Virus record (IMG/VR): IMGVR_UViG_3300034072_001021
Coordinates: 186,001 to 250,000 of that record
Length of the DNA stretch: 64,000 nt
Strand: one strand, 5' to 3'
The position numbers and the translations under genes were made by a program. The notes below the pieces were generated by a model, which was given only the letters and a program-made list of their open reading frames with translations, made no database searches and had not been told where the DNA came from. Below, one piece after another: positions 11,383-38,225 of this stretch. How positions within the stretch are numbered: position 1 is the first letter of the stretch; every line of letters starts with the position of its first letter.

Positions 11383-13278
11383 ATGTCCGTCAACGATCCG
11401 CACAACGGTCAAGAATCCGTGAACACTGGCGCCGAGCAGCGTCAAGACCGTGCAGCCCCTCAGCAGCAACAGCGTCAGGCCCCGGTGGTTAACTCCATCC
11501 TCGACCTGAACCGTCTCCTGGGTGGCGGCATGTCCCGTCGCACCAGCGGTGAACAACTGATCGCCGCCATCGCCGCCTGCAAGTTCTGGTTCTCCGCTGA
11601 CCGTCAACTGGCCGCCGCCGGTGGCATCGATCTGACCAAGATCCAGGTGATCGGCCTGGAAGCTTCCGAGCACAACGTCGAGGTCTCCTCGGTCATCCTG
11701 GCCTACCCGGTCGAGTCCCAGGGCACCCTGCGTGTTCTGACTCACTTCCTGGCCCTGGAATCCAGCCTGGCTGAAGAGAACCAGGTCCGTACCGTCAACC
11801 TGAACCATCGCGACTACCCGCTGCCGGTAGTGGTCTCCGACTACATGACCGAGTCCTACATGGCTCTGGTCGATGAGATCGTGAAGAAGCACTTCGAGCA
11901 GTCCCGTCGCAACGTCGAAGTACAGCGTGCCGGCTGGCGCACCGTCTCCCGCAAGGTCAACTTCTCCGAGCCGGAAAGCACCGAAGCCCGCAACGTCGTG
12001 TTCTACGCCCAGGCGGCCATCGTGGCCATGTACAACCACGTCTACGAGCGTGACCTGTACTTCAGCCTCGAGTGGCTGAGCAAGAACTCCACCCTCGAGA
12101 TCTCGGTCGACATGTCCGGCCGTGAGGCCCACAGCGCCGATGGCCTGCCGCGCCGCCGCGACATCGCGGTGAACGTAGCCGGTAAGGTGGCCAAGGGCGA
12201 CCAGACTGCTTCGGTTGGCCTGGCCAGCCTGGGTGGTTACGTCAGCCTGATGTACTCGCCGCCCCAGGACGAAGACCGCTGGAATCGCAACGTCCGTCGC
12301 GATACCCCGTACTTCACTCCGACCCTGATCATCAACGCCATCGACACCGGCACCAACAGCATCACTGCTGAGCAGCTGCTGCTCGGTCTGGCCGGCGCTT
12401 CGGTGATCAGCTCCAACCAGGCGTGGGCTCAGACCTTCCTGCCGGGCGAAGTTGCCCGCGGTGAGATCGACTACCGTGACACCGGCCTCCTGGGCCTGCT
12501 CGGTCCGGACAAGACCGCTTTCGAGATCGAAGCACGTACCAACCTCGACACCGACAAGTGGGGTCAGTACTTCTTCTCCCTCGTGAACGAGAACCTGGCC
12601 TGGGCTATCGAACTCGAGGAGGGTGGTGACAACTCCTGGATCATGGGTCTGCTGCTCGACGCTGCTTCCGACACCAGCCCGAACCGTGACGCCGTACGTC
12701 GTCTGTACGACTTCGCCGATCGTCTGACCAACAACAACTTCTCCCGTCGCGCTGCCGAACTGGACGTCACCGTCCCGCTGCAGCTGTCCGGTGCCCGTTA
12801 CCTGACCGGTACCTGGATCGACGAGCGTGGTGAAGAGCGTGACCTGCGCGAGTGGGATCTGCTCCGTTGGATGGCCCAGAACCCGACCGACGAAGGCACC
12901 TCGGCCCTGAACTACCAGGACGTCATCGACCGCGTCGACCTAGACGTGGAAGTGCGCGTATCCGAGCAGTTCACCCAGCTGACCAGTGCTCTGGGCGCGT
13001 CGAACGTGAAGTTCAGCCGCTACGTCGACCTGGCGTACATCAATCCGAAGTTCATCCAGGCCCTGGCCGCTGCTGTGGCAGACTGCAAGATCAACATCGA
13101 TCAGCGCAGCGCTCACTACAGCTTCGGCGCTCGTCGTCTGCGTGGCAACACTCGCATCCGCGATTTCGTGGGTGGCGACCTGACCAACGGCATGCTGTCC
13201 AGCCGTCGGATCGGTGGCAACGAGCGTTCCCTGCGTGGTCACGTGGGCAACGGCTTCGGCCATGGTTCGTCCTTCTAA
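11383..13278 (+). CDS. chmA: chimallin / PhuN nuclear shell protein
   Basis: 631 aa with a Q-rich disordered N-terminus. GTWIDERGEERDLREWD and YINPKFIQAL resemble chimallin segments. It lies directly upstream of the nvRNAP beta' subunit and has extreme codon bias. Confidence 0.9.
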   Translation: MSVNDPHNGQESVNTGAEQRQDRAAPQQQQRQAPVVNSILDLNRLLGGGMSRRTSGEQLIAAIAACKFWFSADRQLAAAGGIDLTKIQVIGLEASEHNVEVSSVILAYPVESQGTLRVLTHFLALESSLAEENQVRTVNLNHRDYPLPVVVSDYMTESYMALVDEIVKKHFEQSRRNVEVQRAGWRTVSRKVNFSEPESTEARNVVFYAQAAIVAMYNHVYERDLYFSLEWLSKNSTLEISVDMSGREAHSADGLPRRRDIAVNVAGKVAKGDQTASVGLASLGGYVSLMYSPPQDEDRWNRNVRRDTPYFTPTLIINAIDTGTNSITAEQLLLGLAGASVISSNQAWAQTFLPGEVARGEIDYRDTGLLGLLGPDKTAFEIEARTNLDTDKWGQYFFSLVNENLAWAIELEEGGDNSWIMGLLLDAASDTSPNRDAVRRLYDFADRLTNNNFSRRAAELDVTVPLQLSGARYLTGTWIDERGEERDLREWDLLRWMAQNPTDEGTSALNYQDVIDRVDLDVEVRVSEQFTQLTSALGASNVKFSRYVDLAYINPKFIQALAAAVADCKINIDQRSAHYSFGARRLRGNTRIRDFVGGDLTNGMLSSRRIGGNERSLRGHVGNGFGHGSSF

Positions 13279-13363: not shown

Positions 13364-14827
13364 ATGAACAAACGCAATGGCATTTACTTGCGGGTGCTCA
13401 ACTACGACACTATGTTCCGGCATATGTCGACCCAGGCAATCCTCATGAACGACTTCAACATCGATCTGGAGAGCGACCGCCTGAAGTTGAATCGCCTCAT
13501 TTATGCCAGCCTTGATGGTGACTCACTCAGCAACACAGCAAGCTGCGACTGTGGTGAAATCGTCGGCATGGATAATTACGGTGTGCGCTGTAACACCTGT
13601 CTGTCCACTGTCGTACCGATCACCGAAAAGCCGCTGGAATCGAAGCTGTGGCTGCGCGTCCCTCCGGGCATCAAGGCGTTCATTAACCTGACCGTCTGGC
13701 GCATTCTTTCCAAGAACCTGACTCACTCCAACTTCAGTATCCTCGAGTACCTGTGCAACCCCCGCTACCAACCGCCTGGCAATCTCGCGGTAGACAAGAT
13801 GCGGAAACTGGAACGCCTGGAAATCCCTCGCGGCTACAACCATTTCATCGAGAACTACGAAGCAATCCTGGTGGCGTTGTTCAAGGCCGGCCTGCTCGGG
13901 CCTTCTGCCTCGGCACGTCAGCGGCGCAAGATCATGCGCTTCCTCCAGGAAAACTACGACCGTACGTTCTCCGAGTACATGCCATTCCCGACACGCCTGG
14001 GCTTTATCCGGGAGAGCGCGAATAACCGCATCACGGCCGACCCGAAGATGGTAGCAGCGATCAACGCCGCGCACATCCTCATCGGTATCGAGACTCGTGA
14101 GTCGGCTGAGAACCAGCCCAAGCTCACACAAGCGGTTAAAGAGGCTCGGGTAGTCACGGCGCTACAGGGCATGGATTCGTACTACAAGACTTTCGAGTCT
14201 GAAATCGTCTTCAAGAAACCGGGCATTTCCCGTAAGCTGGTATATGGCACCAAGCCGTACTTCAGTTTCCGGGCAGTGATTACCTCCCGCCAGAAGCCGC
14301 ACCGCCAAGATGGATTGGAGCTGCCCTGGTCGTTGAGTACGTTGCTGTTCAAGCTCCATCTGCAGAACAAGCTGATGGATCGGAACTACACGCCCAATGA
14401 AATGGAGGCGATGATCTACGAGAACACGCTGCGTTGGCACCCTGAGTTGGATCGTCTGTTCAAAGAGCTACTTGCCGAGGCTCCGAATGGTACCATCCCA
14501 ACGACCTTCGGGCGCAACCCGACGCTGACTCGCGGATCGATTGGCTACAACCAGATCGACACCATCAAGACAGACCCGACGGATAACACCATCTCCCTGT
14601 CTCCGCTGAACCTGATCGACAAGAACGCCGACTACGATGGCGACGCGCTGTGGGGTGAGCTTCCGCTCGACCATAAGAACGCCAAAATCATGTCCCGCCT
14701 TGACCCGGTCACCGGCGTGATGGACCTCAATAAACCTTTCACCGTCTCGCGAAACACGACGTTGCCGGCGCCGCTTATCGCGACCCTGACGAACTGGATC
14801 ATTGAGGGCGACGCTGTATCGAAATAA
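13364..14827 (+). CDS. non-virion RNA polymerase beta' N-terminal subunit (phiKZ gp55/56.1-like)
   Basis: Zn site CDC..CNTC, FRAVIT, RNPTL and the catalytic NADYDGD motif. Confidence 0.92.
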   Translation: MNKRNGIYLRVLNYDTMFRHMSTQAILMNDFNIDLESDRLKLNRLIYASLDGDSLSNTASCDCGEIVGMDNYGVRCNTCLSTVVPITEKPLESKLWLRVPPGIKAFINLTVWRILSKNLTHSNFSILEYLCNPRYQPPGNLAVDKMRKLERLEIPRGYNHFIENYEAILVALFKAGLLGPSASARQRRKIMRFLQENYDRTFSEYMPFPTRLGFIRESANNRITADPKMVAAINAAHILIGIETRESAENQPKLTQAVKEARVVTALQGMDSYYKTFESEIVFKKPGISRKLVYGTKPYFSFRAVITSRQKPHRQDGLELPWSLSTLLFKLHLQNKLMDRNYTPNEMEAMIYENTLRWHPELDRLFKELLAEAPNGTIPTTFGRNPTLTRGSIGYNQIDTIKTDPTDNTISLSPLNLIDKNADYDGDALWGELPLDHKNAKIMSRLDPVTGVMDLNKPFTVSRNTTLPAPLIATLTNWIIEGDAVSK

Positions 14828-25069: not shown

Positions 25070-25082
25070 CTAGAGTTCCTTG

Positions 25083-25109
25083 TTTGAATTTTATTCAGCG
25101 ATACATTAT
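25083..25109 (+). promoter_or_regulatory. TTTGAA-N12-ATACATTAT motif
   Basis: One-mismatch copy upstream of the nvRNAP beta gene. Confidence 0.65.
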
Positions 25110-25151
25110 TCATACGGTAAGCTAATAATACCGATGTGTAAGGGGCACACA

Positions 25152-27350
25152 ATGAGTGACGAAAACCCAGACTATCATCAACTGTCGTCGTATGACGGCA
25201 ACGTTCAGCTTCATCCGGAGCTGATGTCGTTGTATGGTCTCAATCCATTCATTCGTCACATCTCGGCTTCTCGAGCTGCGATGTTTACGAACAACCTTTC
25301 TCAGATGGTCGTCATCAAGAACCCGATGGCCAAACGCATCATGTCCGGCATGGAGCGTCCGTTCGGGGAGACCACCTGTTCCATCGAATTCACCGATGAT
25401 GTCGAAATTCTCGAAGTCATCCCACGATTCGCCCACACGGCAGGTGCTAACCGCATCCGCCATTCACCGCAAACAGCGGTGATCTACGAGAACCACGAGA
25501 CCCACAAGATCGGCGTCAAGATGATTGTCGATTACCACATCTCGCACCAGCACTTTGGTACCGAGTTCGTGCGTAACCGCGATGTCATCGACCAGCTGCG
25601 CCGCGGTGCACGGTTCCGTAAGGGCACCAAGCTCGCCCGTTCGCCATTGATCGATGATAATGGCAACTACTGCTACGGTCGTGAGACCAACGTGCTCATG
25701 TGCTCTGACGTGGCAGGGACTGAAGACGGCGTTAAGGTACGCCGTGGCTACATCGAACAAATGGCTCCTACCGGTTTCGAGACCCGTGTCTTCGAGTTCG
25801 GTCGTGAGTACTTCCCCATCAATCAGTCTACTGTACCAGGCCAGTACAAGATCTTCCCGGACATTGGTGAACGTGTAAACAGCAGTGGTCTGCTGGTGGC
25901 TCTGCGTCGTTATGACCCCATCAGCGCCGTGGCCAACATGACCAACGAAGCGCTGCTGCAGCCGGACTACATCTTCGACCGCAAACGTTTCGTGCAACAC
26001 CTGGATGCGGAAGTGGTCGACATCAAAGTCGAACGCAACACGTCCATCAATATCCCGCCCTTGCCAGTCGGGATGGAAGCGCAGTTGTTGAAGTACTACA
26101 ACGCTGACACCGAGTTCTATCGGAAGATCGTTGACGTCTGGATGGATCTGCGTAAGAAGTGCAACCAGCGCAAGATCCAGCTGGAGCTGGAAGACGAGTT
26201 CAGTCAACTGGTGTACGAAGCTATCGGTCGTGTAGGGCCGGACTATCTGCGCCATGACGGCGGTTTCGGCCGTAGCGTTGATGAAACCATCAAGGTGGAC
26301 AAAGTCTACCGTGGTGTCAAGATCGATGCCTGGCGCGTGGAGATCAAGTTCAAGTACCTGTCGATCCCCAACAAGGGCTACAAGATCACCGATATCGACG
26401 GCGACAAGTCCGTAGTGGTAGAGGTGGTTGATGATGAAGACATGCCGCGCGATGAGAATGGCGTGGTGGTTGACATCGTCGTAGACCCCAACTCTCGCTG
26501 GAACCGAGTAACTCCGGCATCCCCCATCGAGATGGTGATCGGTGCATCTGGCCGTGATCTGGGTAAGCGCATCCAAGCCTCGTTCGGCTACGACATGAAT
26601 GTCCAGCTGAAAGAAGAAGAGTGCGAAGATGCGGTGTATCGTCCTGAGAACCTCGAACTGGTCAAGGCAGCTTATGCTGAACTGCTCGAGTACTACAAGG
26701 TCGTAGCGCCATTCCAGTACGAAGACATGACAGATCCTGAGTTCCTGGCGAAGAACCCGGAGCACATGTACGATCATGTCAAGTCCGTGCTGCTGGATCA
26801 CATGTACGGGCTGTATCTGTACATGCCGACCAACAACCCAGTCCATATGCCGACTGTGATCTCGACGATCCGCAAGCGCTGGCCGCCGTTCATTACCCCG
26901 GTGCGTTTCCGTGGTCGTGATGGCAAGATGAAAGTATCGCGCGAACCGATGCTGATCGGTCCGTCGTACTACATCAACCTGGAGAAGACCGCAGAAGACT
27001 CCTGGATGGCCGCTGCATCGTCGCGTTGCAACGTGTTTGGCACTACTGCGCGTCTGAGCAACAACGACAAGTACGACTCTCCCGGCCGCGAGTCCGGTAT
27101 CCGAGTCGGCGAGTCTGAGATCCGCTCTGAGTCTGCTTACTGTGGCGGTGAGGCAATTGCCGATCAGAAGGATGCCAGTAACAACCCGATTGCCCACAAG
27201 TTCGTGGCGCGTCGTGTACTTACCCATCCGACACCGACCAACATGGAAGAGGCGCTGGATCGCAAGATCGTACCTGTGGGTGGTCATCGTCCGCTGGCAT
27301 ACATGCGGCACATGTTCGCATGCTCCGGTAAAGAACTGACCAACGAATAA
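25152..27350 (+). CDS. non-virion RNAP beta C-terminal subunit (gp71-73-like)
   Basis: KITDIDGDK (GxK motif), DIVVDPNSRWNR and GIRVGESE; uninterrupted. Confidence 0.92.
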   Translation: MSDENPDYHQLSSYDGNVQLHPELMSLYGLNPFIRHISASRAAMFTNNLSQMVVIKNPMAKRIMSGMERPFGETTCSIEFTDDVEILEVIPRFAHTAGANRIRHSPQTAVIYENHETHKIGVKMIVDYHISHQHFGTEFVRNRDVIDQLRRGARFRKGTKLARSPLIDDNGNYCYGRETNVLMCSDVAGTEDGVKVRRGYIEQMAPTGFETRVFEFGREYFPINQSTVPGQYKIFPDIGERVNSSGLLVALRRYDPISAVANMTNEALLQPDYIFDRKRFVQHLDAEVVDIKVERNTSINIPPLPVGMEAQLLKYYNADTEFYRKIVDVWMDLRKKCNQRKIQLELEDEFSQLVYEAIGRVGPDYLRHDGGFGRSVDETIKVDKVYRGVKIDAWRVEIKFKYLSIPNKGYKITDIDGDKSVVVEVVDDEDMPRDENGVVVDIVVDPNSRWNRVTPASPIEMVIGASGRDLGKRIQASFGYDMNVQLKEEECEDAVYRPENLELVKAAYAELLEYYKVVAPFQYEDMTDPEFLAKNPEHMYDHVKSVLLDHMYGLYLYMPTNNPVHMPTVISTIRKRWPPFITPVRFRGRDGKMKVSREPMLIGPSYYINLEKTAEDSWMAAASSRCNVFGTTARLSNNDKYDSPGRESGIRVGESEIRSESAYCGGEAIADQKDASNNPIAHKFVARRVLTHPTPTNMEEALDRKIVPVGGHRPLAYMRHMFACSGKELTNE

Positions 27351-27372: not shown

Positions 27373-29475
27373 ATGGAGATAACGATGCGTCGAATCACTG
27401 CACGCAGTTTCATGAACCTCGACATCCATGCGATGTGGCCACTGCCTGATGAAAAGATGGAAGTGGAATTCGATGACGGTGTCATCGAGACCAACACTCG
27501 CCGCATGGTGCTGAGCTGGTTCTGTTGGGAACTGCATCGTAAGTTCCCACTCACCCCGTTGAACAAATCCCACTATGTGGGCAATGGGTTCCCGAGTGCG
27601 GACATGGTGCCGAAAACCATCTCCAACATCGTCCACGACCTCCACTACACCTACTTCGGTGACGGTCATCCTGAGATCCGTGATCACGATGCTGTGTATG
27701 ATCGTGAAGAGGTATGGCGGGTCGTTAAGGATGTAGGTAACGAGATCTACAACGTCCTGTCGATCAACCTGGAAGAGTGGCAAGTATCGATCAACGCGTT
27801 CCATCTGGACGAGCTGTTCTGGTACGAACCTATCGTCAAGATCCGCGACTCGCTGGAGCCTACCCAGATCTCCATCAGCCATGCGCTCGATGCAGCTGGG
27901 CAGATCCTGATGAAAGATCCGGCGATTCTGCACAACCCGATCGTTCGGGGCCTGCGCAGTAAGCAGATCAAGATGGGCCAGTTCCTGCAGATCCTGGTGT
28001 GCCTGGGCTTCCGAGACGACCTGGATCAGACCATCTTCCGGAAGCCGGTGATCAAGGGCTTCTATGAAGGTCTGACCACCTTGCACGATATCATGATCGA
28101 GTCGTGCTCGGCCAAGAAGGCGCTGATGTTCACCAAGAAGCCTCTGCAGATCGTAGAGTACTTTAACCGTAAGATGCAGCTGTCTACGGTGGTGGTCGAT
28201 AAGCTCCTCTGGGAAGACTGTGGGTCGGATCGCTACTCCGAGATCTACGTGGACTCCGTGATCCTGCCGCACCTGGAAGGTAAGCTGTACCTGGGCTCCA
28301 ATGGTAAGCTGACGCCGGTACGTCAAGATGACCACAAGCTGGTGGGTAAAACCATCAAGATGCGCTCTGCGTTCAACTGCAAGCATCGTGGCGAAGGGGC
28401 TGTCTGTCGTGTCTGCTTCGGTGAACTGGCTTGGTCGATTCCTCGCTTCACTTCCCTCGGTCACACCTGTGCTACCGAACTGTGCCGTGAGGGTTCTCAG
28501 CGTACGCTGTCCGTCAAGCACTTGGACGGTAGTTCGATGGTGGAGGTCATCGAGATCCCGGAAGAGTATCAGTCGTACATCGAAGTCTGCGCAGCCAACA
28601 CCGACGCCGATGGCGATGGTAACGTGGAACTGCAAGTGGACGTCGAGCTACTCGGTGAAGAGATCCCGCAGAGTGCCGATGAAAGTTCGCTGATCAAGTT
28701 CAACTCGCGTATCGCCAAGATGACCCCCATGCTCATCCTGAAGTCGACTCCCGAGAAGAATATCGAGAACGCGTCCAACCTGGTGAACCTGAACAAGGAC
28801 ACCAACATCAAGCACCTGAACATCCATCGCTTCACTGCGTTCCGTGAAGTGCAGTTGCGGATGGTCAACCTGCGTGAAGAAGCCACTGAGGTCTACGTCC
28901 CGGTAAGCCAGGGTGCCCGTCTGGGTTCCTTGACCCGCCTGCTCCTGAACCACATTCAGGAAAATGGCTACACTGTCGACGAGAACGGTGACTTCTGCAT
29001 CGACCTGAGCAACTGGGACTTCTCGTCCCCGGCGTTCAGCCTGCCGCGTCGTCATGCCAGTACGCTGGACTTCATGGCAGAGGTCGAGGCATTCATTCGC
29101 TCGCCGTCCAAGAAGTCTGAGCGCAATGGCTTTGCTGGCCGTATGCTCACCAGTTACACCGACCCTGTGACGGCACTGGTAGACTTCAGCGATCTGGTCA
29201 ACTCAAAGCTGCGTGTTAACATCGCGCCCTTGGAGGTAATCCTGCTGAGTCTCATGCGTCCTGCCGATGATCCTGACGACTATAACCTTCCGGATTACGA
29301 TCGCCCGATCAAGTTCGAAGAACATCGTCGGCTGATCCAGGAACGCTCCGCTGGCCAGATCTTCGCCTACGAACGGCAACCGGACTACATCGAGGATGTC
29401 AACGCGTATTCGCCGCACAAGCGCACGCCCGGCCTGCTCGATCCGTTTGTGTTCCCTGAGGTGATCAATACCTGA
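27373..29475 (+). CDS. non-virion RNAP beta' C-terminal subunit (gp74-like)
   Basis: RSAFNC...VCRVCFG Zn site, LCREGSQRTLSVKH, synteny. Confidence 0.9.
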   Translation: MEITMRRITARSFMNLDIHAMWPLPDEKMEVEFDDGVIETNTRRMVLSWFCWELHRKFPLTPLNKSHYVGNGFPSADMVPKTISNIVHDLHYTYFGDGHPEIRDHDAVYDREEVWRVVKDVGNEIYNVLSINLEEWQVSINAFHLDELFWYEPIVKIRDSLEPTQISISHALDAAGQILMKDPAILHNPIVRGLRSKQIKMGQFLQILVCLGFRDDLDQTIFRKPVIKGFYEGLTTLHDIMIESCSAKKALMFTKKPLQIVEYFNRKMQLSTVVVDKLLWEDCGSDRYSEIYVDSVILPHLEGKLYLGSNGKLTPVRQDDHKLVGKTIKMRSAFNCKHRGEGAVCRVCFGELAWSIPRFTSLGHTCATELCREGSQRTLSVKHLDGSSMVEVIEIPEEYQSYIEVCAANTDADGDGNVELQVDVELLGEEIPQSADESSLIKFNSRIAKMTPMLILKSTPEKNIENASNLVNLNKDTNIKHLNIHRFTAFREVQLRMVNLREEATEVYVPVSQGARLGSLTRLLLNHIQENGYTVDENGDFCIDLSNWDFSSPAFSLPRRHASTLDFMAEVEAFIRSPSKKSERNGFAGRMLTSYTDPVTALVDFSDLVNSKLRVNIAPLEVILLSLMRPADDPDDYNLPDYDRPIKFEEHRRLIQERSAGQIFAYERQPDYIEDVNAYSPHKRTPGLLDPFVFPEVINT

Positions 29476-33146: not shown

Positions 33147-33156
33147 AAGGATTACG

Positions 33157-33188
33157 GCATAGAGGGAGGCTCAGGCCTCCCTCTATGT
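33157..33188. terminator. Bidirectional GCATAG-family hairpin
   Basis: GCATAGAGGGAGGC-tcag-GCCTCCCTCTATGT between convergent genes. Confidence 0.8.
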
Positions 33189-33217
33189 CTATTTCTTTTT
33201 TGGCTTACGGCAACAGC

Positions 33218-36088
33218 TTATAATCCGTAATATGCCAGCACATTTTGACGGGACTTCTCGTTAGGGATGTCCTTCAGCACGTCTTCCCACTTGATCAGAC
33301 GCTTCACAGCCAGGTCACGCTTTTCCGGATCAGCAGTCGACATCAGCACCGAGGTCAGGTTGTTGAAGTTACGCAGGCCTTTGGTACCGATGGCCATCTG
33401 ACCAACACCGGTGTAGATCTTCTTGGCCGAGCAGATATCTTTGCTGTGCTCGTGGAAGAAGTTCAGCAGCTCAGTCCAGCCTTGGACGAAGTCTTCGCCA
33501 TCCAGACGCAGGACACGACTGATGCAGCGATCCAGCAGGGTCTGGTACGGCGCTGCTTTCACAGCGTTGTCACCAGCTTCATCACGACCTTTGGCGTAGC
33601 TCTTCAGGTCTTCGCTCACGAACTTGACAGTCATCGTCATTGACTCCTCATGAATGTCACTGATACGCTTCTTAATGGAAGCAGCGTCCAGTTGGGTTGA
33701 AATACTGAACAGACGAGCAGCACGACTTGCAAGTGCAGCTTCATCTGTGTTGATGCCTGGAAGGATCTGACCACGGGCCCAAGCTTTGATCTCGCGCTTA
33801 GTCCAGTGTTCTACCTTACGATGGTCACGGTTCCGATCGCGGACGTAGATGCCCGACGGTGTGGATGGAACCCGAATACCGTTGAGAACATAAGATCTGG
33901 CATCTTCACGGTACCAGAAGACCGGTACTTTGAATCTGACGTAGATCTCTTCCCAGAGGTCTTCTTCAGGCGCCTTCTCAGTAGCTGAGATTTGCTTTCG
34001 CAACCATGCCTTCAGTTCAGCGTCACGCCATTCGATTGGCAGCTTATTTGGACGAGTGGGATCATTGATGAACACACCGTCTTCGAGCGCCAATGGACGT
34101 ACGTTGGATTTCAGATAATCAACAACCTCATCGACAGACCAGTGCACAGCACTTGTGTTGAACTGCACGCTAATCAAACGCTTTGCACGTTCGATGCACT
34201 CTGGATCACGCACCGAGAAATCAGCATGGACTTCGTCATTGGCCAAAGCCTTGATTTCGTCCCACGACCATGACAGAGGACTGTCCAACTTACGCAACCG
34301 ATCTTCAACCAGAACACCGTTGGTGGTCTTGAGAGGGTTCACCGAGTTGCGGTAGAAGTTGTAGATGTGATCGTCAGTCCAGTGCGGATCGATCCTGAAC
34401 TTAGAACGGATAGCCAGAAGAACATCTGCTTCAGAGAAGTTAGATGCTTTCACATCACCTTTCAGATACCCGATCAACTCCTCCTCACTTGCGTAATTCG
34501 GATTTGTGATTTCAGGCAGTTCTTCAGCAGGCGTCTCACCATTTGCAATGTAAGCAATCGCTTGCTCATCATTGTAACGGTCTGGCACTCGGAACTTGAT
34601 CCGAGCAGAAAGCAGCACCAGGCTCTTGGGTTTGCTGGTGTTGGCCTTACCTTGAGCCCAGGCCTTCAATGTCTCTGTAGACCAGTCTGCCGGATGTTCC
34701 TTGTCACGGTTCCGATCATTGAGCAGTACGCCGCTGTTAAAGCCCTCTGGGAGCTTCCCTGTAGCGAAGTAAGCATGAAGGTCAACGTCTGTCCAGTTAT
34801 CGACAGCTGTCGTACAACGCGCTCGTAGAGCGGCCATGAGCGTGGCATGTGTGACATTCATCCCCATGGGGATCAGACCCCACACCCAGCCGATCAGCTC
34901 AGACGCAGTCCATTCGGAGGCAGTCAGGAACTTACGCCGTTCGACATTGTCGATGACTTCCTTACCGATAGCGTGACAGAGTGCATTTACCAGTTCTTTA
35001 TCTTCGGTAACGACCACGGAAACTTGAGAAGGTTCTTCGTGAACTTCCTCATTGACCACAATGGGTTCTTCCGACGTGCCCTCACTGACGACATCATCAA
35101 CTGGGAGATCGTCTGCCGATGCAACTTCTTCGACAACGACGGGTTCTTCGTCATGGTCTTCTTGGACGACCTCTGCTTCATCCTCGGTTGGATTACTTTC
35201 GGTAACCTCATCGATGACTTCCTCTTCTACCGGATAACGGGCAGCAAGTACAGCAGACGCTTCAGTATCACCACTTTCAATCAGACTGTTCAGTTGATCG
35301 TCCGAGTAAGAAGCGTAATCATGAGTGAAGCTCGGGACTTCTCCAGTGGACACCCAATGACGAAGCTCGTCGATACCCCAGAACCATTCACCACCAAAGT
35401 GACTGATCGCTGTCTTCAACAACTCGGGGTTATCGGACTCGATCTCACCGAGTACCCAAGCGTGCAGCTCAGGATCACTCCACTTGTCCGCCTCTTTATC
35501 GAGACGATTACGATCATTGACCAACACACCTGTGCTAGTCATTGCCGGATAAACAGATTTCTGGATGTACTGGCAGTAATCTTCGAACGTGATGCCCATC
35601 GGCAACTCGAAACGGTTACATGCCTCATCAATGGCGTACATCTGGTATTTCTCAGGGGTTCCGAAGAACCCCATGCCCAGATCAATCAACTCACTGTCAT
35701 TCCAGTGAGTGGCATCTTTGACCCAGCGATCTGGATCGTTGACGTAGTTGCCGTTGATGGTCTTCTCAGGGACCTTCTCGAAGAGCAGCCAGTTGTCGAG
35801 GTCTTCTTCACCCCAACTTACAGCATCTTTATCTTCGAGCACGGCCTTGGAACGCACTGCTACGTAGAACTCAGTGGTGCCGGTAGTGTAGTTGGTGAAC
35901 AGTTCGCCAGACGCTAGGGCGTACAGTTCAGCCAGACTCCACTCGTTGAGAGGTTTGGCCTCACGCTCAACGTCGCCCACCCAGAGACCGTTACTGGTCT
36001 TGGCTGGTTCTCTCCCGAACTGCTCGTACAAAGAGACTTCTCTCTTCGACCAAGCAGCAGGATAGCGGCCGTCGTATTTGTCGGACAT
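33218..36088 (-). CDS. 956-aa repeat protein (gp79-like position) with a tandem ~80-aa Trp-rich module
   Basis: Seven copies of G-x4-D-x2-R-x7-W-x3-E(L/I)-x-AW, an acidic linker and a helical C-terminal domain. Confidence 0.85.
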   Translation of the reverse strand: MSDKYDGRYPAAWSKREVSLYEQFGREPAKTSNGLWVGDVEREAKPLNEWSLAELYALASGELFTNYTTGTTEFYVAVRSKAVLEDKDAVSWGEEDLDNWLLFEKVPEKTINGNYVNDPDRWVKDATHWNDSELIDLGMGFFGTPEKYQMYAIDEACNRFELPMGITFEDYCQYIQKSVYPAMTSTGVLVNDRNRLDKEADKWSDPELHAWVLGEIESDNPELLKTAISHFGGEWFWGIDELRHWVSTGEVPSFTHDYASYSDDQLNSLIESGDTEASAVLAARYPVEEEVIDEVTESNPTEDEAEVVQEDHDEEPVVVEEVASADDLPVDDVVSEGTSEEPIVVNEEVHEEPSQVSVVVTEDKELVNALCHAIGKEVIDNVERRKFLTASEWTASELIGWVWGLIPMGMNVTHATLMAALRARCTTAVDNWTDVDLHAYFATGKLPEGFNSGVLLNDRNRDKEHPADWSTETLKAWAQGKANTSKPKSLVLLSARIKFRVPDRYNDEQAIAYIANGETPAEELPEITNPNYASEEELIGYLKGDVKASNFSEADVLLAIRSKFRIDPHWTDDHIYNFYRNSVNPLKTTNGVLVEDRLRKLDSPLSWSWDEIKALANDEVHADFSVRDPECIERAKRLISVQFNTSAVHWSVDEVVDYLKSNVRPLALEDGVFINDPTRPNKLPIEWRDAELKAWLRKQISATEKAPEEDLWEEIYVRFKVPVFWYREDARSYVLNGIRVPSTPSGIYVRDRNRDHRKVEHWTKREIKAWARGQILPGINTDEAALASRAARLFSISTQLDAASIKKRISDIHEESMTMTVKFVSEDLKSYAKGRDEAGDNAVKAAPYQTLLDRCISRVLRLDGEDFVQGWTELLNFFHEHSKDICSAKKIYTGVGQMAIGTKGLRNFNNLTSVLMSTADPEKRDLAVKRLIKWEDVLKDIPNEKSRQNVLAYYGL

Positions 36089-36098
36089 GGAATGATCC

Positions 36099-37400
36099 TT
36101 AGGTAAAGGCCTTATGAAGATCGAGTTCGGCCGTTTTCAGTTCCTTAGCGTGCGCCGAGGCCATCATGATATCCATGAACTTCGATGCGACAGAGGTGTT
36201 TTCAGCAGCCAGACCAAACGGAAGTGCAGCCAATGCCTCGCCTGCGCACTTAGCACAGAAACCATCGCCCGGCGTCTTACAGAATGCAGGCGAACGAGTC
36301 AGCACTGACTTACCTTCGAGTGATTTGGCACGGGCTTCATCGAGCAACACCACTCCTTTATCTGTGATTTCCCACAGACCGGCGTAGTATTCGCCTTGAC
36401 CCGGTTCGATATTGCGAACAATACCCAACTTGCTGCCACAATCGTCCTCTGCAATGCTGGTGTTCTGGAACACACGCATGAAGAACTTCACGGCTTCACC
36501 GCCGAGAGCGGTCAGAGCACCACGATAGAAGGAACCGGCACGAGTGGAGTTGAACATTGGCACTACTTTGGAGGTATCCCAGCCTTCGTTCAGGCTATTG
36601 ACCACCAGTTCAGCGCTACCGCCCTCGTTAAAGCCAGCTTCAGGACCGTGAATCAGGAACATACGCTTACGAGCAGTGCCGAAAGTCTTGTTGGAAATCA
36701 AGAAACCCTCGGAAGGGTCGTCTTTGATCCACTTACGATCCATGTCGATCAGCTCATTCTGAATTTTCGAGACGACTACCGGGTCATGGAGACGATCTTC
36801 GTTCTCTTTCAGGCGCTGAGCACGCACATCTTTAACTTTCGGGTCGGTAGTCAGTGCTTTAGGTGACAACGTCGGCACAAAAAGCTGCACGAAACCAGCC
36901 AGAGCACCCACACAACGACCAAATCGCATGTACATCTTGACCGGAATCTGGTCTTCAGTCGGTTCGACACCTGAAATCTCCGGATCATCGACCAATTTCT
37001 TGGCAATGATGCGCTCGATAGCCGAAATACTACACGGACCGACTTGATAACTGATGCGTTTACCGAACGGTTCGACCAGAGCGATCCAGTTGAACAGCAA
37101 ATCGCCGTATGTGGAGGTCACTTCAGCCTCACAATTGGGAATTGTGTCCGGTGTTACGGTAATTTGATCAGCCGGATAGTAGAGAGGGGTCATCGGCTTG
37201 GAACCATCGACCACAACCCACTCGTTTCCGTGATCGAGAGGTACGTACATCTCAGTGCTGTTGACGTTGTAGCGCACGTCGTAGGGTTGAGGCACGTAAT
37301 CCTTCGGATCTTTGACGACACTGAACGCCCGAATGACCCATTCCTTCCGGGCGTAGGCTTTTGCTTGCAGTGCCTTTACATAAAGCTCTTCGCGATTCAT
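36099..37400 (-). CDS. virion RNA polymerase beta' subunit fragment (gp80-like)
   Basis: EDDCGS and RSPAFCKT..FCAKCAG beta' Zn motif; RAGSFYRG..TALGGE. Confidence 0.88.
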   Translation of the reverse strand: MNREELYVKALQAKAYARKEWVIRAFSVVKDPKDYVPQPYDVRYNVNSTEMYVPLDHGNEWVVVDGSKPMTPLYYPADQITVTPDTIPNCEAEVTSTYGDLLFNWIALVEPFGKRISYQVGPCSISAIERIIAKKLVDDPEISGVEPTEDQIPVKMYMRFGRCVGALAGFVQLFVPTLSPKALTTDPKVKDVRAQRLKENEDRLHDPVVVSKIQNELIDMDRKWIKDDPSEGFLISNKTFGTARKRMFLIHGPEAGFNEGGSAELVVNSLNEGWDTSKVVPMFNSTRAGSFYRGALTALGGEAVKFFMRVFQNTSIAEDDCGSKLGIVRNIEPGQGEYYAGLWEITDKGVVLLDEARAKSLEGKSVLTRSPAFCKTPGDGFCAKCAGEALAALPFGLAAENTSVASKFMDIMMASAHAKELKTAELDLHKAFT

Positions 37401-37403
37401 GGG

Positions 37404-38225
37404 TTACTCCGACAGCTGCTTCACACGACTCTTGACGTGCTTGAAGATTTGCTGGGTTGAGAAAATATCGTCATGCAGGTTCTCAACGTAGAACATGACT
37501 TCGTCTTGAAGCGCTTCGTTCGATACGTTGGTGTGCAGGGCGATCGAAATGAGGTCGTCTGCCACGACTTCCGGCTTCCCGGAGAGAAGACGTTCCTTGT
37601 TCTCATTGATGAGTGTCATCGGGTCTTCGTAGAGAACGCCGTTCTGAAGCGATTCCAGACCGATGGTCGTTGCAGTACCGACCAGATTCTGATGTTTATT
37701 CAGAACCTGTACGATTTCCTGCAGACCTTGTTTGGCAACTTCAGTGTTCTCGATATTTCGCTGGACAGTTTCATTGATAACAATGATGACATCCATCGGT
37801 ACATCCAGAACGTACTCCATGAGTTCTTCAGGAATCCGATTGGTCAGTAGCGCGAGGATGTCGGTGAAAATCTCAATGCTGTCTTCACCAGCCTCGATGA
37901 TGGCTTTGATTTCTTCATCAAAGTCACTGGGCTTGAAATGAAGTGCATCGAGGATCTCTGCCAGAATGTCCATGCGCAGACGTTCGAGATCCAGACCAAT
38001 GTTCATCTGCTGAAGCAGTGCAGCAACTTGGGTGTAGATGATCCCGATGGCACGATCTGACAGGGTCAGTTGGTCGTGGACGTTAGCCTCCATCTTGAGG
38101 TTAACGATTTGATCACGCCACAGAACAGCGTCGTGTTTCTGAAGTGCAGCAGCCAATGAAGAAACCCCGGCCATCACTTCGGGACTTACGCGGTTGACGA
38201 GAATGTCCGAGAGTTCTTGAAACAT
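37404..38225 (-). CDS. conserved helical protein (gp81-like position)
   Basis: 273 aa, aaggt RBS, co-oriented with the vRNAP gene. Confidence 0.75.
   Translation of the reverse strand: MFQELSDILVNRVSPEVMAGVSSLAAALQKHDAVLWRDQIVNLKMEANVHDQLTLSDRAIGIIYTQVAALLQQMNIGLDLERLRMDILAEILDALHFKPSDFDEEIKAIIEAGEDSIEIFTDILALLTNRIPEELMEYVLDVPMDVIIVINETVQRNIENTEVAKQGLQEIVQVLNKHQNLVGTATTIGLESLQNGVLYEDPMTLINENKERLLSGKPEVVADDLISIALHTNVSNEALQDEVMFYVENLHDDIFSTQQIFKHVKSRVKQLSE

What the first reader, a model, noticed from the sequence alone, without database searches (positions are those of the whole stretch)
33218..36088. 956-aa protein built from a ~80-aa Trp-rich tandem repeat I do not recognise
Seen: seven copies of a core (GLWVGDVER, GNYVNDPDR, GVLVNDRNR, GVLLNDRNR, GVLVEDRLR, GVFINDPTR, GIYVRDRNR). 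Each is followed about 8 residues later by W-x3-E(L/I)-x-A(W/L)-x2-G and preceded by a W-x2-(D/E)...P..T segment. There are also 2-3 partial copies, an ~80-aa acidic linker and a non-repeat helical C-domain. It is co-transcribed with the virion RNAP gene. Inference: a beads-on-a-string scaffold or multivalent binder fused to a conserved virion domain, possibly a lineage-specific expansion.
Basis: seen in the sequence. Interest (0 to 1): 0.7.

Follow-up and report, generated by a model that had tools for sequence, protein, structure and literature searches.

The report
Jumbo-phage capsid protein with expanded repeats
This gene of a nucleus-forming jumbo phage encodes the counterpart of phiKZ gp81 and Goslar gp77: a capsid-binding tail domain behind ten copies of a small module found only in this phage protein family, which normally has two, so it probably forms a long acidic fibre on the phage head.

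Summary
The ORF is on the minus strand (33218-36088, 956 aa). It has seven canonical ~75-aa modules, three degenerate ones, a 75-aa acidic disordered linker and a helical C-terminal domain. Each module scores 35-50 bits against a model built from the other six; shuffled copies score 12 at most.

It is the positional and sequence counterpart of phiKZ gp81, 201phi2-1 gp140 and Psa21 gp088 (PHROG 18270, "virion structural protein"). It lies 10 nt downstream of the gene for the virion RNA polymerase beta' subunit (phiKZ gp80 homologue).

Its C-terminal domain is homologous to Goslar gp77 (hhalign 94.8%, shared PHROG 18957). Cryo-EM places gp77 on the outer capsid surface.

The module has no Pfam family and no fold match in PDB or AFDB. 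Among 1.84 billion representative proteins only 126 carry it, almost always with the same C-terminal domain. The usual copy number is two; one lineage has 3-17, and this protein belongs to it.

Best reading: a Hoc-like capsid-anchored fibre built from a new module. The capsid location rests on remote homology, and what the modules do is unknown. This is a new variant of a known but uncharacterised family, of moderate interest.

The parts
33218..36088 (-). Whole gene, 956 aa (P0001): member of the phiKZ gp81 / Goslar gp77 family
   Evidence: ORF list and translation. PHROG 18270 E 5.3e-58 in 6 stretches and PHROG 18957 E 3.5e-9. It is the only gene in the 259-kb genome with the repeat or the C-domain.
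35831..36061 (-). Unit 1 (aa 10-86), canonical, core GLWVGDVER
35606..35824 (-). Unit 2 (aa 89-161), canonical, core GNYVNDPDR; the best-conserved distal unit (67% mean identity within its clade)
35384..35602 (-). Unit 3 (aa 163-235), canonical, core GVLVNDRNR; lacks the leading Trp
35234..35383 (-). Unit 4 (aa 236-285), degenerate: helices kept, hairpin core lost
   Evidence: Weak HMM hit at aa 236-256; helices in the AF2 model
35009..35233 (-). Acidic disordered linker (aa 286-360), net charge -28; length varies 48-102 aa among close relatives
   Evidence: pLDDT below 50 over 287-356; charge; 33% identity and variable length
34805..35008 (-). Unit 5 (aa 361-428), degenerate: altered hairpin (VIDNVERR) followed by a canonical W-x3-EL helix
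   Evidence: match at aa ~385-424, E 9.5e-4
34586..34804 (-). Unit 6 (aa 429-501), canonical, core GVLLNDRNR; basic (pI 9.2)
34391..34585 (-). Unit 7 (aa 502-566), degenerate: no hairpin core and no Trp
   Evidence: Weak hit at aa 500-521; helices in the AF2 model
34151..34390 (-). Unit 8 (aa 567-646), canonical, core GVLVEDRLR
33926..34150 (-). Unit 9 (aa 647-721), canonical, core GVFINDPTR; groups with unit 1 of two-unit relatives
33698..33925 (-). Unit 10 (aa 722-797), canonical, core GIYVRDRNR; basic (pI 10.5); groups with unit 2 of two-unit relatives
33221..33697 (-). C-terminal helical domain (aa 798-956), homologous to the ordered domain of the Goslar capsid decorator gp77 and to phiKZ gp81 aa 332-470
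   Evidence: hhalign 94.8%, E 5.2e-8 versus gp77. hhalign 96.1%, E 2.8e-9 versus phiKZ gp81. PHROG 18957. PDB profile hit 11fg_A, E 0.007. Most conserved region, 68%.
36099..37400 (-). Upstream gene: virion RNA polymerase beta' C-terminal subunit (phiKZ gp80 homologue), 10 nt from the start codon of the finding
   Evidence: PHROG 2962 E 4.3e-130; tblastn to PHIKZ080, E 7e-54
37404..38225 (-). First gene of the three-gene minus-strand block; positional counterpart of phiKZ gp79
   Evidence: PHROG 5038 E 1.3e-13. Same position in DT01, phiKZ, 201phi2-1, Goslar and L006. No BLASTP similarity to phiKZ gp79 itself.
33156..33189 (.). 15-bp-stem GC-rich hairpin between the convergent gene ends; candidate bidirectional terminator ending the block

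Best explanation
The gene encodes this phage's single member of the phiKZ gp81 / Goslar gp77 family of Chimalliviridae virion proteins. The C-terminal ~140-160-aa helical domain is the conserved part. By homology with Goslar gp77 it docks on the outer face of the capsid between major-capsid-protein subunits, in tens to hundreds of copies per head. In front of it lie ten small modules of ~65-80 aa. Each is built as helix, beta-hairpin (G-h-h-h-x-D-x-x-R), helix (W-x3-E-L-x-A-W), helix. A 75-aa poly-acidic disordered spacer interrupts the array. Together they would project from the shell as a flexible, strongly negative fibre (whole protein net charge -63, pI 4.75), much as T4 Hoc projects its Ig-like domains from a C-terminal capsid-binding domain. 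Shown: the repeat, its restriction to this family, the expansion from two units, the homology of the C-domain, and the synteny. Inferred: the outer-capsid location and outward projection. Speculative: what the fibre does. My preferred guess is weak multivalent adhesion to host-surface or matrix polymers, or electrosteric shielding of the particle.
For: Family membership: PHROG 18270 E 5.3e-58 with 6 stretches. phiKZ gp81, 201phi2-1 gp140 and Psa21 gp088 hit the same PHROG at E 1.5e-227 to 2e-87 and carry the same module. The BFVD fold search returns only these proteins. Synteny: the gene lies directly after the gp80-type vRNAP gene in the window, DT01, Psa21, phiKZ, 201phi2-1, Goslar and the metagenomic locus L006. 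C-domain homology to Goslar gp77: PHROG 18957 matched by gp77 (1.7e-18), P0001 (3.5e-9), P0045 (8.7e-20) and phiKZ gp81 (3.5e-6). hhalign gives 94.8%, E 5.2e-8 over 128 columns covering the whole ordered gp77 domain. The PDB profile hit is E 0.007. Location of gp77: outer capsid surface between two MCP protomers, also present on empty capsids, 60 copies modelled, ~290-680 per virion estimated by mass spectrometry (bioRxiv 10.64898/2026.04.21.720040). There is no second family member in the genome. Module array: confident AF2 model (pLDDT 83.7) with only the linker disordered. The C-domain and unit 10 are the most conserved parts, and the linker varies in length.
Against: The capsid location is transferred across about 16% sequence identity from a 212-aa protein that has no repeats. 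phiKZ gp81 itself is absent from all solved phiKZ virion and capsid structures (no PDB sequence match; not mentioned in the phiKZ atlas paper). GenBank calls it only 'structural protein', whereas gp79 and gp80 are called 'structural head protein'. No ligand, partner or phenotype is known for any family member. The distal units 1-2 are well conserved (58-67%), not hypervariable as host-range determinants often are. The attempt to model the C-domain against the capsid protein gave no answer.
Confidence: 0.55

Rival explanations
1. The protein is an internal head or ejected protein, packaged with the virion RNA polymerase. The array would act as a spacer or scaffold, or as a protein injected into the host, rather than as a surface fibre.
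For: The gene sits in a conserved block with the vRNAP beta' subunit and a head protein. Long acidic disordered segments are common in packaged or ejected phage proteins (general knowledge). phiKZ gp81 has never been seen on the phiKZ capsid surface.
Against: The homologous Goslar gp77 lies on the outside of the shell. It also persists on empty, portal-less capsids that lack the internal vertex complex. There is no match to the phiKZ internal-head-protein family PF12699 or to any other Pfam family. Goslar's five vRNAP subunits do not include gp77.
Confidence: 0.15
2. The protein is a capsid cement or 'staple'. The modules would lie flat on the shell, each binding a successive capsid subunit and reinforcing the large T=27 head.
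For: Many decoration proteins are cementing proteins (review PMC7602432, listed). The whole-protein AF2 model keeps high pLDDT across unit junctions. Every unit is individually conserved by position.
Against: Copy number ranges from 0 (Goslar gp77) through 2 to 17 in phages of one family, which fits a lattice-matched role poorly. A 48-102-aa poly-acidic disordered spacer interrupts the array. pTM is only 0.46, so the relative placement of units is not confidently predicted.
Confidence: 0.12
3. The modules are SAP/HeH-type (Ish1-like) helix-extension-helix motifs that bind nucleic acid or another cellular polymer. They could, for example, serve capsid docking or trafficking inside the infected cell.
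For: 19 of 103 units give sub-threshold hits to Pfam Ish1 (PF10281, best E 3.9e-4), and 2 hit SAP_new25. Rho N-terminal, Ku70 SAP and YqbF domains appear among the weak structural matches. Units 6 and 10 are basic.
Against: All these hits are below threshold (at most 14.5 bits against a 26.6-bit cut-off in a whole protein) and cover only a 13-residue helix. The structural Z scores of 2.3-2.5 are noise level. The protein is strongly acidic overall. Goslar manages with no repeats at all.
Confidence: 0.08

Closest known systems
phiKZ gp81 (PHIKZ081), 201phi2-1 gp140, Psa21 gp088: PHROG 18270 'virion structural protein'
   Same: Same gene position after the vRNAP beta' gene. Same module (helix, G-x-h-h-x-D-x-x-R hairpin, W-x3-E-L helix). 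Same C-terminal domain (hhalign 96.1% to phiKZ gp81). An acidic or low-complexity segment is also present.
   Different: These proteins are 467-570 aa with one or two modules. The window protein has seven canonical and three degenerate modules in 956 aa. None of these relatives has a known function or a solved structure.
Goslar gp77 capsid decorator (PDB 11fg; bioRxiv 10.64898/2026.04.21.720040)
   Same: Homologous C-terminal helical domain (PHROG 18957; hhalign 94.8%). Same gene position after the vRNAP subunit gene gp78.
   Different: gp77 is 212 aa. It has no repeat modules, only a disordered Ala/Pro/Glu-rich N-terminus. Identity in the shared domain is about 16%.
T4 Hoc (highly immunogenic outer capsid protein)
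   Same: Analogous architecture: a C-terminal capsid-binding domain with an N-terminal string of small domains projecting from the shell. Non-essential adhesion role (general knowledge; review PMC7602432, listed).
   Different: Hoc domains are Ig-like beta-sandwiches. The modules here are small helix/hairpin units with no Ig or other Pfam match. There is no sequence relationship. This is a likeness in how it may work, not membership.
HeH/SAP-like motifs, Pfam Ish1 (PF10281)
   Same: The W-x3-E-L-x2-W-L helix start resembles the first helix of the Ish1 motif. 19 of 103 units give weak hits.
   Different: All hits are below the gathering score. The match covers 13 residues only. Structural Z scores to SAP and Rho-N domains are 2.3-2.5. 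That Ish1 belongs to the HeH/SAP clan is from my memory, not tested here.

Membership tests
phiKZ gp81-like virion structural protein (PHROG 18270) | Significant match to the family profile | tested here: met
   E 5.3e-58, 197.7 bits, 6 stretches. phiKZ gp81 scores 1.5e-227 and 201phi2-1 gp140 scores 1.2e-199 on the same profile.
phiKZ gp81-like virion structural protein (PHROG 18270) | Gene directly downstream of the gp80-type vRNAP beta' subunit gene | tested here: met
   10-nt gap in the window. Same order in DT01, Psa21, phiKZ, 201phi2-1 and L006.
phiKZ gp81-like virion structural protein (PHROG 18270) | Repeat module plus C-terminal helical domain in one chain | tested here: met
   Most of the ~120 further module-bearing representatives (102 of 122) also carry the C-domain. 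hhalign of the C-domain to phiKZ gp81 gives 96.1%.
phiKZ gp81-like virion structural protein (PHROG 18270) | Physically present in purified virions | not testable with these tools
   Known only from database annotations of relatives. There are no proteomic data for this phage.
Goslar gp77-type capsid decorator | Homology of the capsid-binding globular domain | tested here: met
   hhalign 94.8%, E 5.2e-8, 128 columns. Shared PHROG 18957. PDB profile hit E 0.007.
Goslar gp77-type capsid decorator | Binds the outer capsid surface between two MCP protomers | tested here: inconclusive
   Complex prediction of the C-domain with the phage's own MCP (G000 84130-86364) gave 'no answer'; the MCP chain folded at pLDDT 26-27. 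Needs cryo-EM.
Goslar gp77-type capsid decorator | Small single-domain protein (~210 aa) | tested here: not met
   956 aa, with an N-terminal extension of about 800 aa.
T4 Hoc-like decoration proteins | Ig-like beta-sandwich domains | tested here: not met
   No Pfam match. The units are helix/hairpin modules.
HeH/SAP clan (Pfam Ish1 PF10281) | Score at or above the Pfam gathering threshold (26.6 bits) | tested here: not met
   Best single-unit E 3.9e-4. Whole proteins reach at most 14.5 bits, and P0001 gives no Ish1 hit at all.
HeH/SAP clan (Pfam Ish1 PF10281) | Helix-extension-helix fold superposable on SAP or Rho-N domains | tested here: inconclusive
   VIA Z 2.5 (Rho-N, 1a62), 2.4 (Ku70 SAP, 1jjr), 2.3 (YqbF, 2hjq); these are noise level.
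phiKZ internal head proteins (PF12699) | Match to PF12699 | tested here: not met
   No Pfam hit even at E 10.

The most novel reading that the evidence does not exclude
The ~75-aa module is a previously undescribed small alpha/beta fold confined to one protein family of nucleus-forming jumbo phages. It is used as a length-adjustable building block (0, 1-2, 3, 6-7, ~10, 14-17 copies) for fibres anchored all over the capsid. Some chimalliviruses would then carry a dense acidic 'fur' of tens to hundreds of such fibres. Its function, whether adhesion to host or matrix polymers, particle shielding, or handling of capsids inside the infected cell, would be new for this virus family.
Probability: 0.4. 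Interest if true: 0.6.

Novelty: new variant of a known kind. Interest (0 to 1): 0.48.

Why it matters
Chimalliviridae (phiKZ-like phages) are model systems for the phage nucleus and are candidates for phage therapy, yet most of their virion proteins have no known role. This analysis links phiKZ gp81 and its relatives, a conserved virion protein without a function, to the one family member with a known place in the particle, the Goslar capsid decorator gp77. It also defines a repeat module that Pfam and the structure libraries do not hold. One lineage, found in compost, soil, subsurface and wastewater samples, has multiplied the module from two copies to as many as 17. If the array is exposed on the capsid, it is a natural display scaffold of adjustable length. 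It is also a candidate factor for adsorption, stability or environmental persistence. The cultured phages pPa_SNUABM_DT01 (966-aa orthologue) and phiKZ (two-module form) allow a direct test.

Tried and rejected
**Searches with no useful result**
- Pfam on the whole protein and its neighbours found nothing for P0001.
- Pfam at E up to 10 on six family members gave only scattered sub-threshold hits.
- Pfam on 103 single units gave only weak Ish1-type hits.
- Foldseek of the whole AF2 model against PDB gave only generic helical-repeat alignments at E > 0.3.
- The two-unit model found nothing in any library: Foldseek PDB best E 1.3, VIA-align against 48,161 chains best Z 3.6, AFDB clusters best E 0.78.
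- ESM Atlas returned nothing usable by features, and TM of 0.35 or less (by query) by structure.
- VIA-align of the whole model matched only the C-domain to generic helical bundles, Z 6.9 or less. The Goslar structure is evidently not in that library.

**Complex prediction**
- The C-domain was modelled against the phage's own major capsid protein (residues 160-744). The verdict was 'no answer'. The capsid protein was folded without an alignment at pLDDT 26-27, so this is evidence neither for nor against binding.

**Literature**
- Searches for phiKZ gp81 / PHIKZ081 and 201phi2-1 gp140 found no functional data.
- The guessed id PMC3323674 for the phiKZ head-proteome paper is not held.

**Other attempts**
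- tblastn of Goslar gp77 against phage genomes finds only Goslar itself.
- Contigs from two metatranscriptome and two wastewater runs were laid on the locus. Fragments of close strains cover the gene with no indels or joints. This does not show transcription or a single transcript, and the one contig spanning the gp80/gp81 junction comes from a run that is probably DNA.
- A 49-kb scan of the DT01 annotation for the capsid gene was a miss.

**Ideas rejected**
- A recent slippage-type repeat: there is no DNA-level repeat, and paralogous units are 20-32% identical.
- A second, repeat-less paralogue serving as the 'real' decorator: none exists in the genome.
Full report
**What is there**

The finding's coordinates hold one open reading frame on the minus strand (33218-36088, ATG start, 956 aa, kept as P0001). 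The plus strand is closed by many stops. An AAGGA lies eight bases before the ATG. The preceding gene ends 10 nt upstream. A 15-bp-stem hairpin (33156-33189) separates the gene's end from a convergent gene.

The window is part of a complete 259,140-bp virus record with direct terminal repeats; the window covers bases 186001-250000 of it. It encodes chimallin, split multisubunit RNA polymerases and other phiKZ-type genes. It is therefore a nucleus-forming jumbo phage of the Chimalliviridae. The nearest cultured relative is Pseudomonas phage pPa_SNUABM_DT01. Near-identical DNA occurs in subsurface, soil, wastewater and sediment metagenomes.

**The repeat is real**

The 59 residues around each align without gaps. 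In a leave-one-out test each ~75-aa unit scores 34.6-50.0 bits against a profile of the other six, while 200 shuffles of the unit reach 12 bits at most.

The secondary structure in two confident AlphaFold models shows the same order of elements in each unit (whole protein pLDDT 83.7, units 8-9 alone pLDDT 85.3):
- a helix starting W-[ST]-x-[DE]-[DE]-h;
- a short beta-hairpin carrying G-h-h-h-x-D-x-x-R;
- a helix W-x3-E-[LI]-x-A-W-x2-G;
- a longer amphipathic helix.

Across 103 units from 14 proteins, the hairpin Arg is invariant. The hairpin Gly and Asp, and the Trp and Glu of the second helix, are at least 90% conserved.

The two long gaps between cores contain three degenerate units (aa 236-285, 361-428, 502-566) that have lost the hairpin or the tryptophans. 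A 75-aa poly-acidic spacer (aa 286-360, net charge -28) is the only disordered segment. Residues ~798-956 form a non-repeat helical domain. Overall the protein is very acidic (net -63, pI 4.75), but the last unit and the C-domain are basic or neutral.

No DNA-level tandem repeat remains. Paralogous units are 20-32% identical, whereas the same unit in homologues of ~53% overall identity is 48-68% identical. The duplications are therefore old and each unit is kept by position.

**What family it belongs to**

Pfam has nothing. PHROGs place the protein in phrog_18270, 'virion structural protein' (E 5.3e-58, six stretches). Its last 125 residues fall in phrog_18957.

The gene upstream is a clear homologue of phiKZ gp80, the beta' C-terminal subunit of the virion RNA polymerase. 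In phiKZ, 201phi2-1, Psa21, DT01, Goslar and a metagenomic contig, the gene after the gp80 homologue is the counterpart of this one:

| Phage or record | Protein | Length (aa) | Modules |
|---|---|---|---|
| phiKZ | gp81 | 473 | 2 |
| 201phi2-1 | gp140 | 467 | 1-2 |
| Psa21 | gp088 | 570 | 2 |
| DT01 | PA10_00167 | 966 | about 10, by homology |
| L006 (metagenome) | P0045 | 1410 | about 17 |
| Goslar | gp77 | 212 | 0 |

phiKZ gp81 and its relatives are annotated only as virion structural proteins. I found no functional study.

**The C-terminal domain and where the protein probably sits**

A profile of the family hits two PDB sequences. One is 'Capsid Decorator gp77' of phage Goslar (11fg_A, E 0.007). 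The other is a 60-chain entity in entry 36za with the same matched sequence.

Three further results strengthen this link:
- Goslar gp77 matches phrog_18957 at E 1.7e-18, the same PHROG matched by P0001, P0045, phiKZ gp81 and Psa21 gp088.
- A 57-sequence alignment of the C-domain aligns to gp77 residues 79-209, its whole ordered domain, with hhalign probability 94.8% and E 5.2e-8.
- The same alignment matches phiKZ gp81 aa 332-470 at 96.1%.

[quoted passage not shown] One well-ordered copy and at least two weaker copies occur per asymmetric unit. It is present on empty portal-less capsids too. Mass spectrometry estimates ~290-680 copies per virion.

The window's genome has only this one gene with the C-domain or the repeat. 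It is therefore the phage's sole family member, not a side copy.

**How special the repeat is**

A profile of the unit was run against 1.84 billion representative proteins and found 126 hits at E of 0.001 or better. Most of them also have the same C-terminal domain; those lacking it are often short fragments.

About 100 representatives have two units, and a few have one. A tree of the C-domain puts every expanded form (3, 6-7, 8-9, 11-12, 14-17 units) in one clade whose early branches have two units. In the unit tree, the last two units of P0001 group with units 1 and 2 of the two-unit proteins. New units were therefore added on the N-terminal side.

Within the ~960-aa clade, mean pairwise identity differs by region:
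- C-domain 68%, unit 2 67%, unit 10 66%: the best conserved.
- Middle units 42-51%.
- Linker 33%, with length varying 48-102 aa: the least conserved.

Close strains in four public runs show no insertions, deletions or joints in the gene.

**Is the fold known?**

Not detectably. The two-unit model gives no meaningful match in any cellular or solved-structure library:
- Foldseek/PDB, best E 1.3;
- VIA-align against 48,161 chains, best Z 3.6;
- AFDB clusters, best E 0.78;
- ESM Atlas, nothing usable.

BFVD returns only the gp81 family: DT01, Psa21, 201phi2-1, Noxifer and Phabio.

The one recurring faint signal is to helix-extension-helix motifs. Nineteen of 103 units hit Pfam Ish1 below threshold, over a 13-residue W-x3-EL-x2-WL stretch. 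Rho-N, Ku70-SAP and YqbF appear at Z 2.3-2.5. This is a lead, not membership.

**How it most likely works**

By homology, the conserved C-domain docks on the outside of the T=27 shell. The N-terminal ~800 residues cannot be inside if the anchor is outside. So ten small modules and a poly-acidic spacer would extend from the capsid as a negatively charged fibre. The plan resembles T4 Hoc (C-terminal capsid anchor, N-terminal domain string), but with an unrelated module.

The range of copy number (0 to 17) and the disordered spacer argue against a lattice-matched cement role. The outside location of gp77 argues against an internal or ejected role. What the fibre binds, if anything, is unknown.

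I put about 0.95 on family membership, about 0.6 on the outer-capsid location, and about 0.3 on an adhesion-type function. The combined best explanation gets 0.55.

The main weaknesses are these:
- The location is inferred across about 16% identity.
- phiKZ gp81 has never been seen in phiKZ capsid maps.
- The structure-prediction test of C-domain/MCP binding returned no answer.

**Verdict**

The functional reading remains inference. The protein is a new, strongly expanded variant of a known but uncharacterised jumbo-phage virion family, carrying a module that no domain or fold library holds. Interest is moderate.

Noticed in passing
PDB entries 36za (chain 7) and 11fg (chain A), seen: In the PDB table, a 147-aa entity with 60 chains in entry 36za is named 'Inner-peripheral baseplate spoke gp220'. 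Its matched sequence is identical to Goslar gp77 over the aligned stretch (chain residues 56-142, gp77 residues 121-207). Sixty copies fit one per capsid asymmetric unit. The paper describes gp220 as a different protein, the phiKZ gp27 homologue. The name looks mis-assigned.
   Followed up: partly
window 11383-13278 (+): Nuclear shell protein (chimallin) gene, PHROG 4795, E 1.3e-65. This marks the phage as nucleus-forming.
   Followed up: no
window 13364-14827, 25080-27350 and 27373-29475 (all +): Three further split RNA-polymerase beta/beta'-type subunit genes (PHROGs 2987, 3295, 3015; Pfam RNA_pol_Rpb2_6 in the second). I did not assign them to the virion or the non-virion enzyme.
   Followed up: no
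window 36396-36763 (inside the vRNAP beta' gene): In wastewater run X7 the summed contig word depth jumps to about 800-1750 here, against about 20 in the flanks; run X4 shows a smaller peak. This is probably a conserved RNAP stretch shared with a far more abundant related phage in those samples.
   Followed up: no
window 33156-33189: Perfect 15-bp-stem, GC-rich hairpin between two convergent genes, with T-runs on both strands. It is a likely bidirectional terminator.
   Followed up: partly
G000 67641-69818 (-), outside the window (locus L017): A 725-aa protein matching many tail-fibre and tail-protein PHROGs. It was seen while looking for the capsid gene. The MCP itself is at G000 84130-86364 (PHROG 3231, E 7e-158).
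   Followed up: no
bioRxiv 10.1101/2024.08.29.610337; homologues P0006 and P0016: A DT01-like jumbo phage (JPTI55) from garden compost is reported to transduce a genomic island in Pseudomonas fluorescens SBW25. Two ~53%-identical homologues of this protein come from 'compost metagenome' records. The expanded-repeat clade may therefore include that phage group. I did not check this.
   Followed up: no
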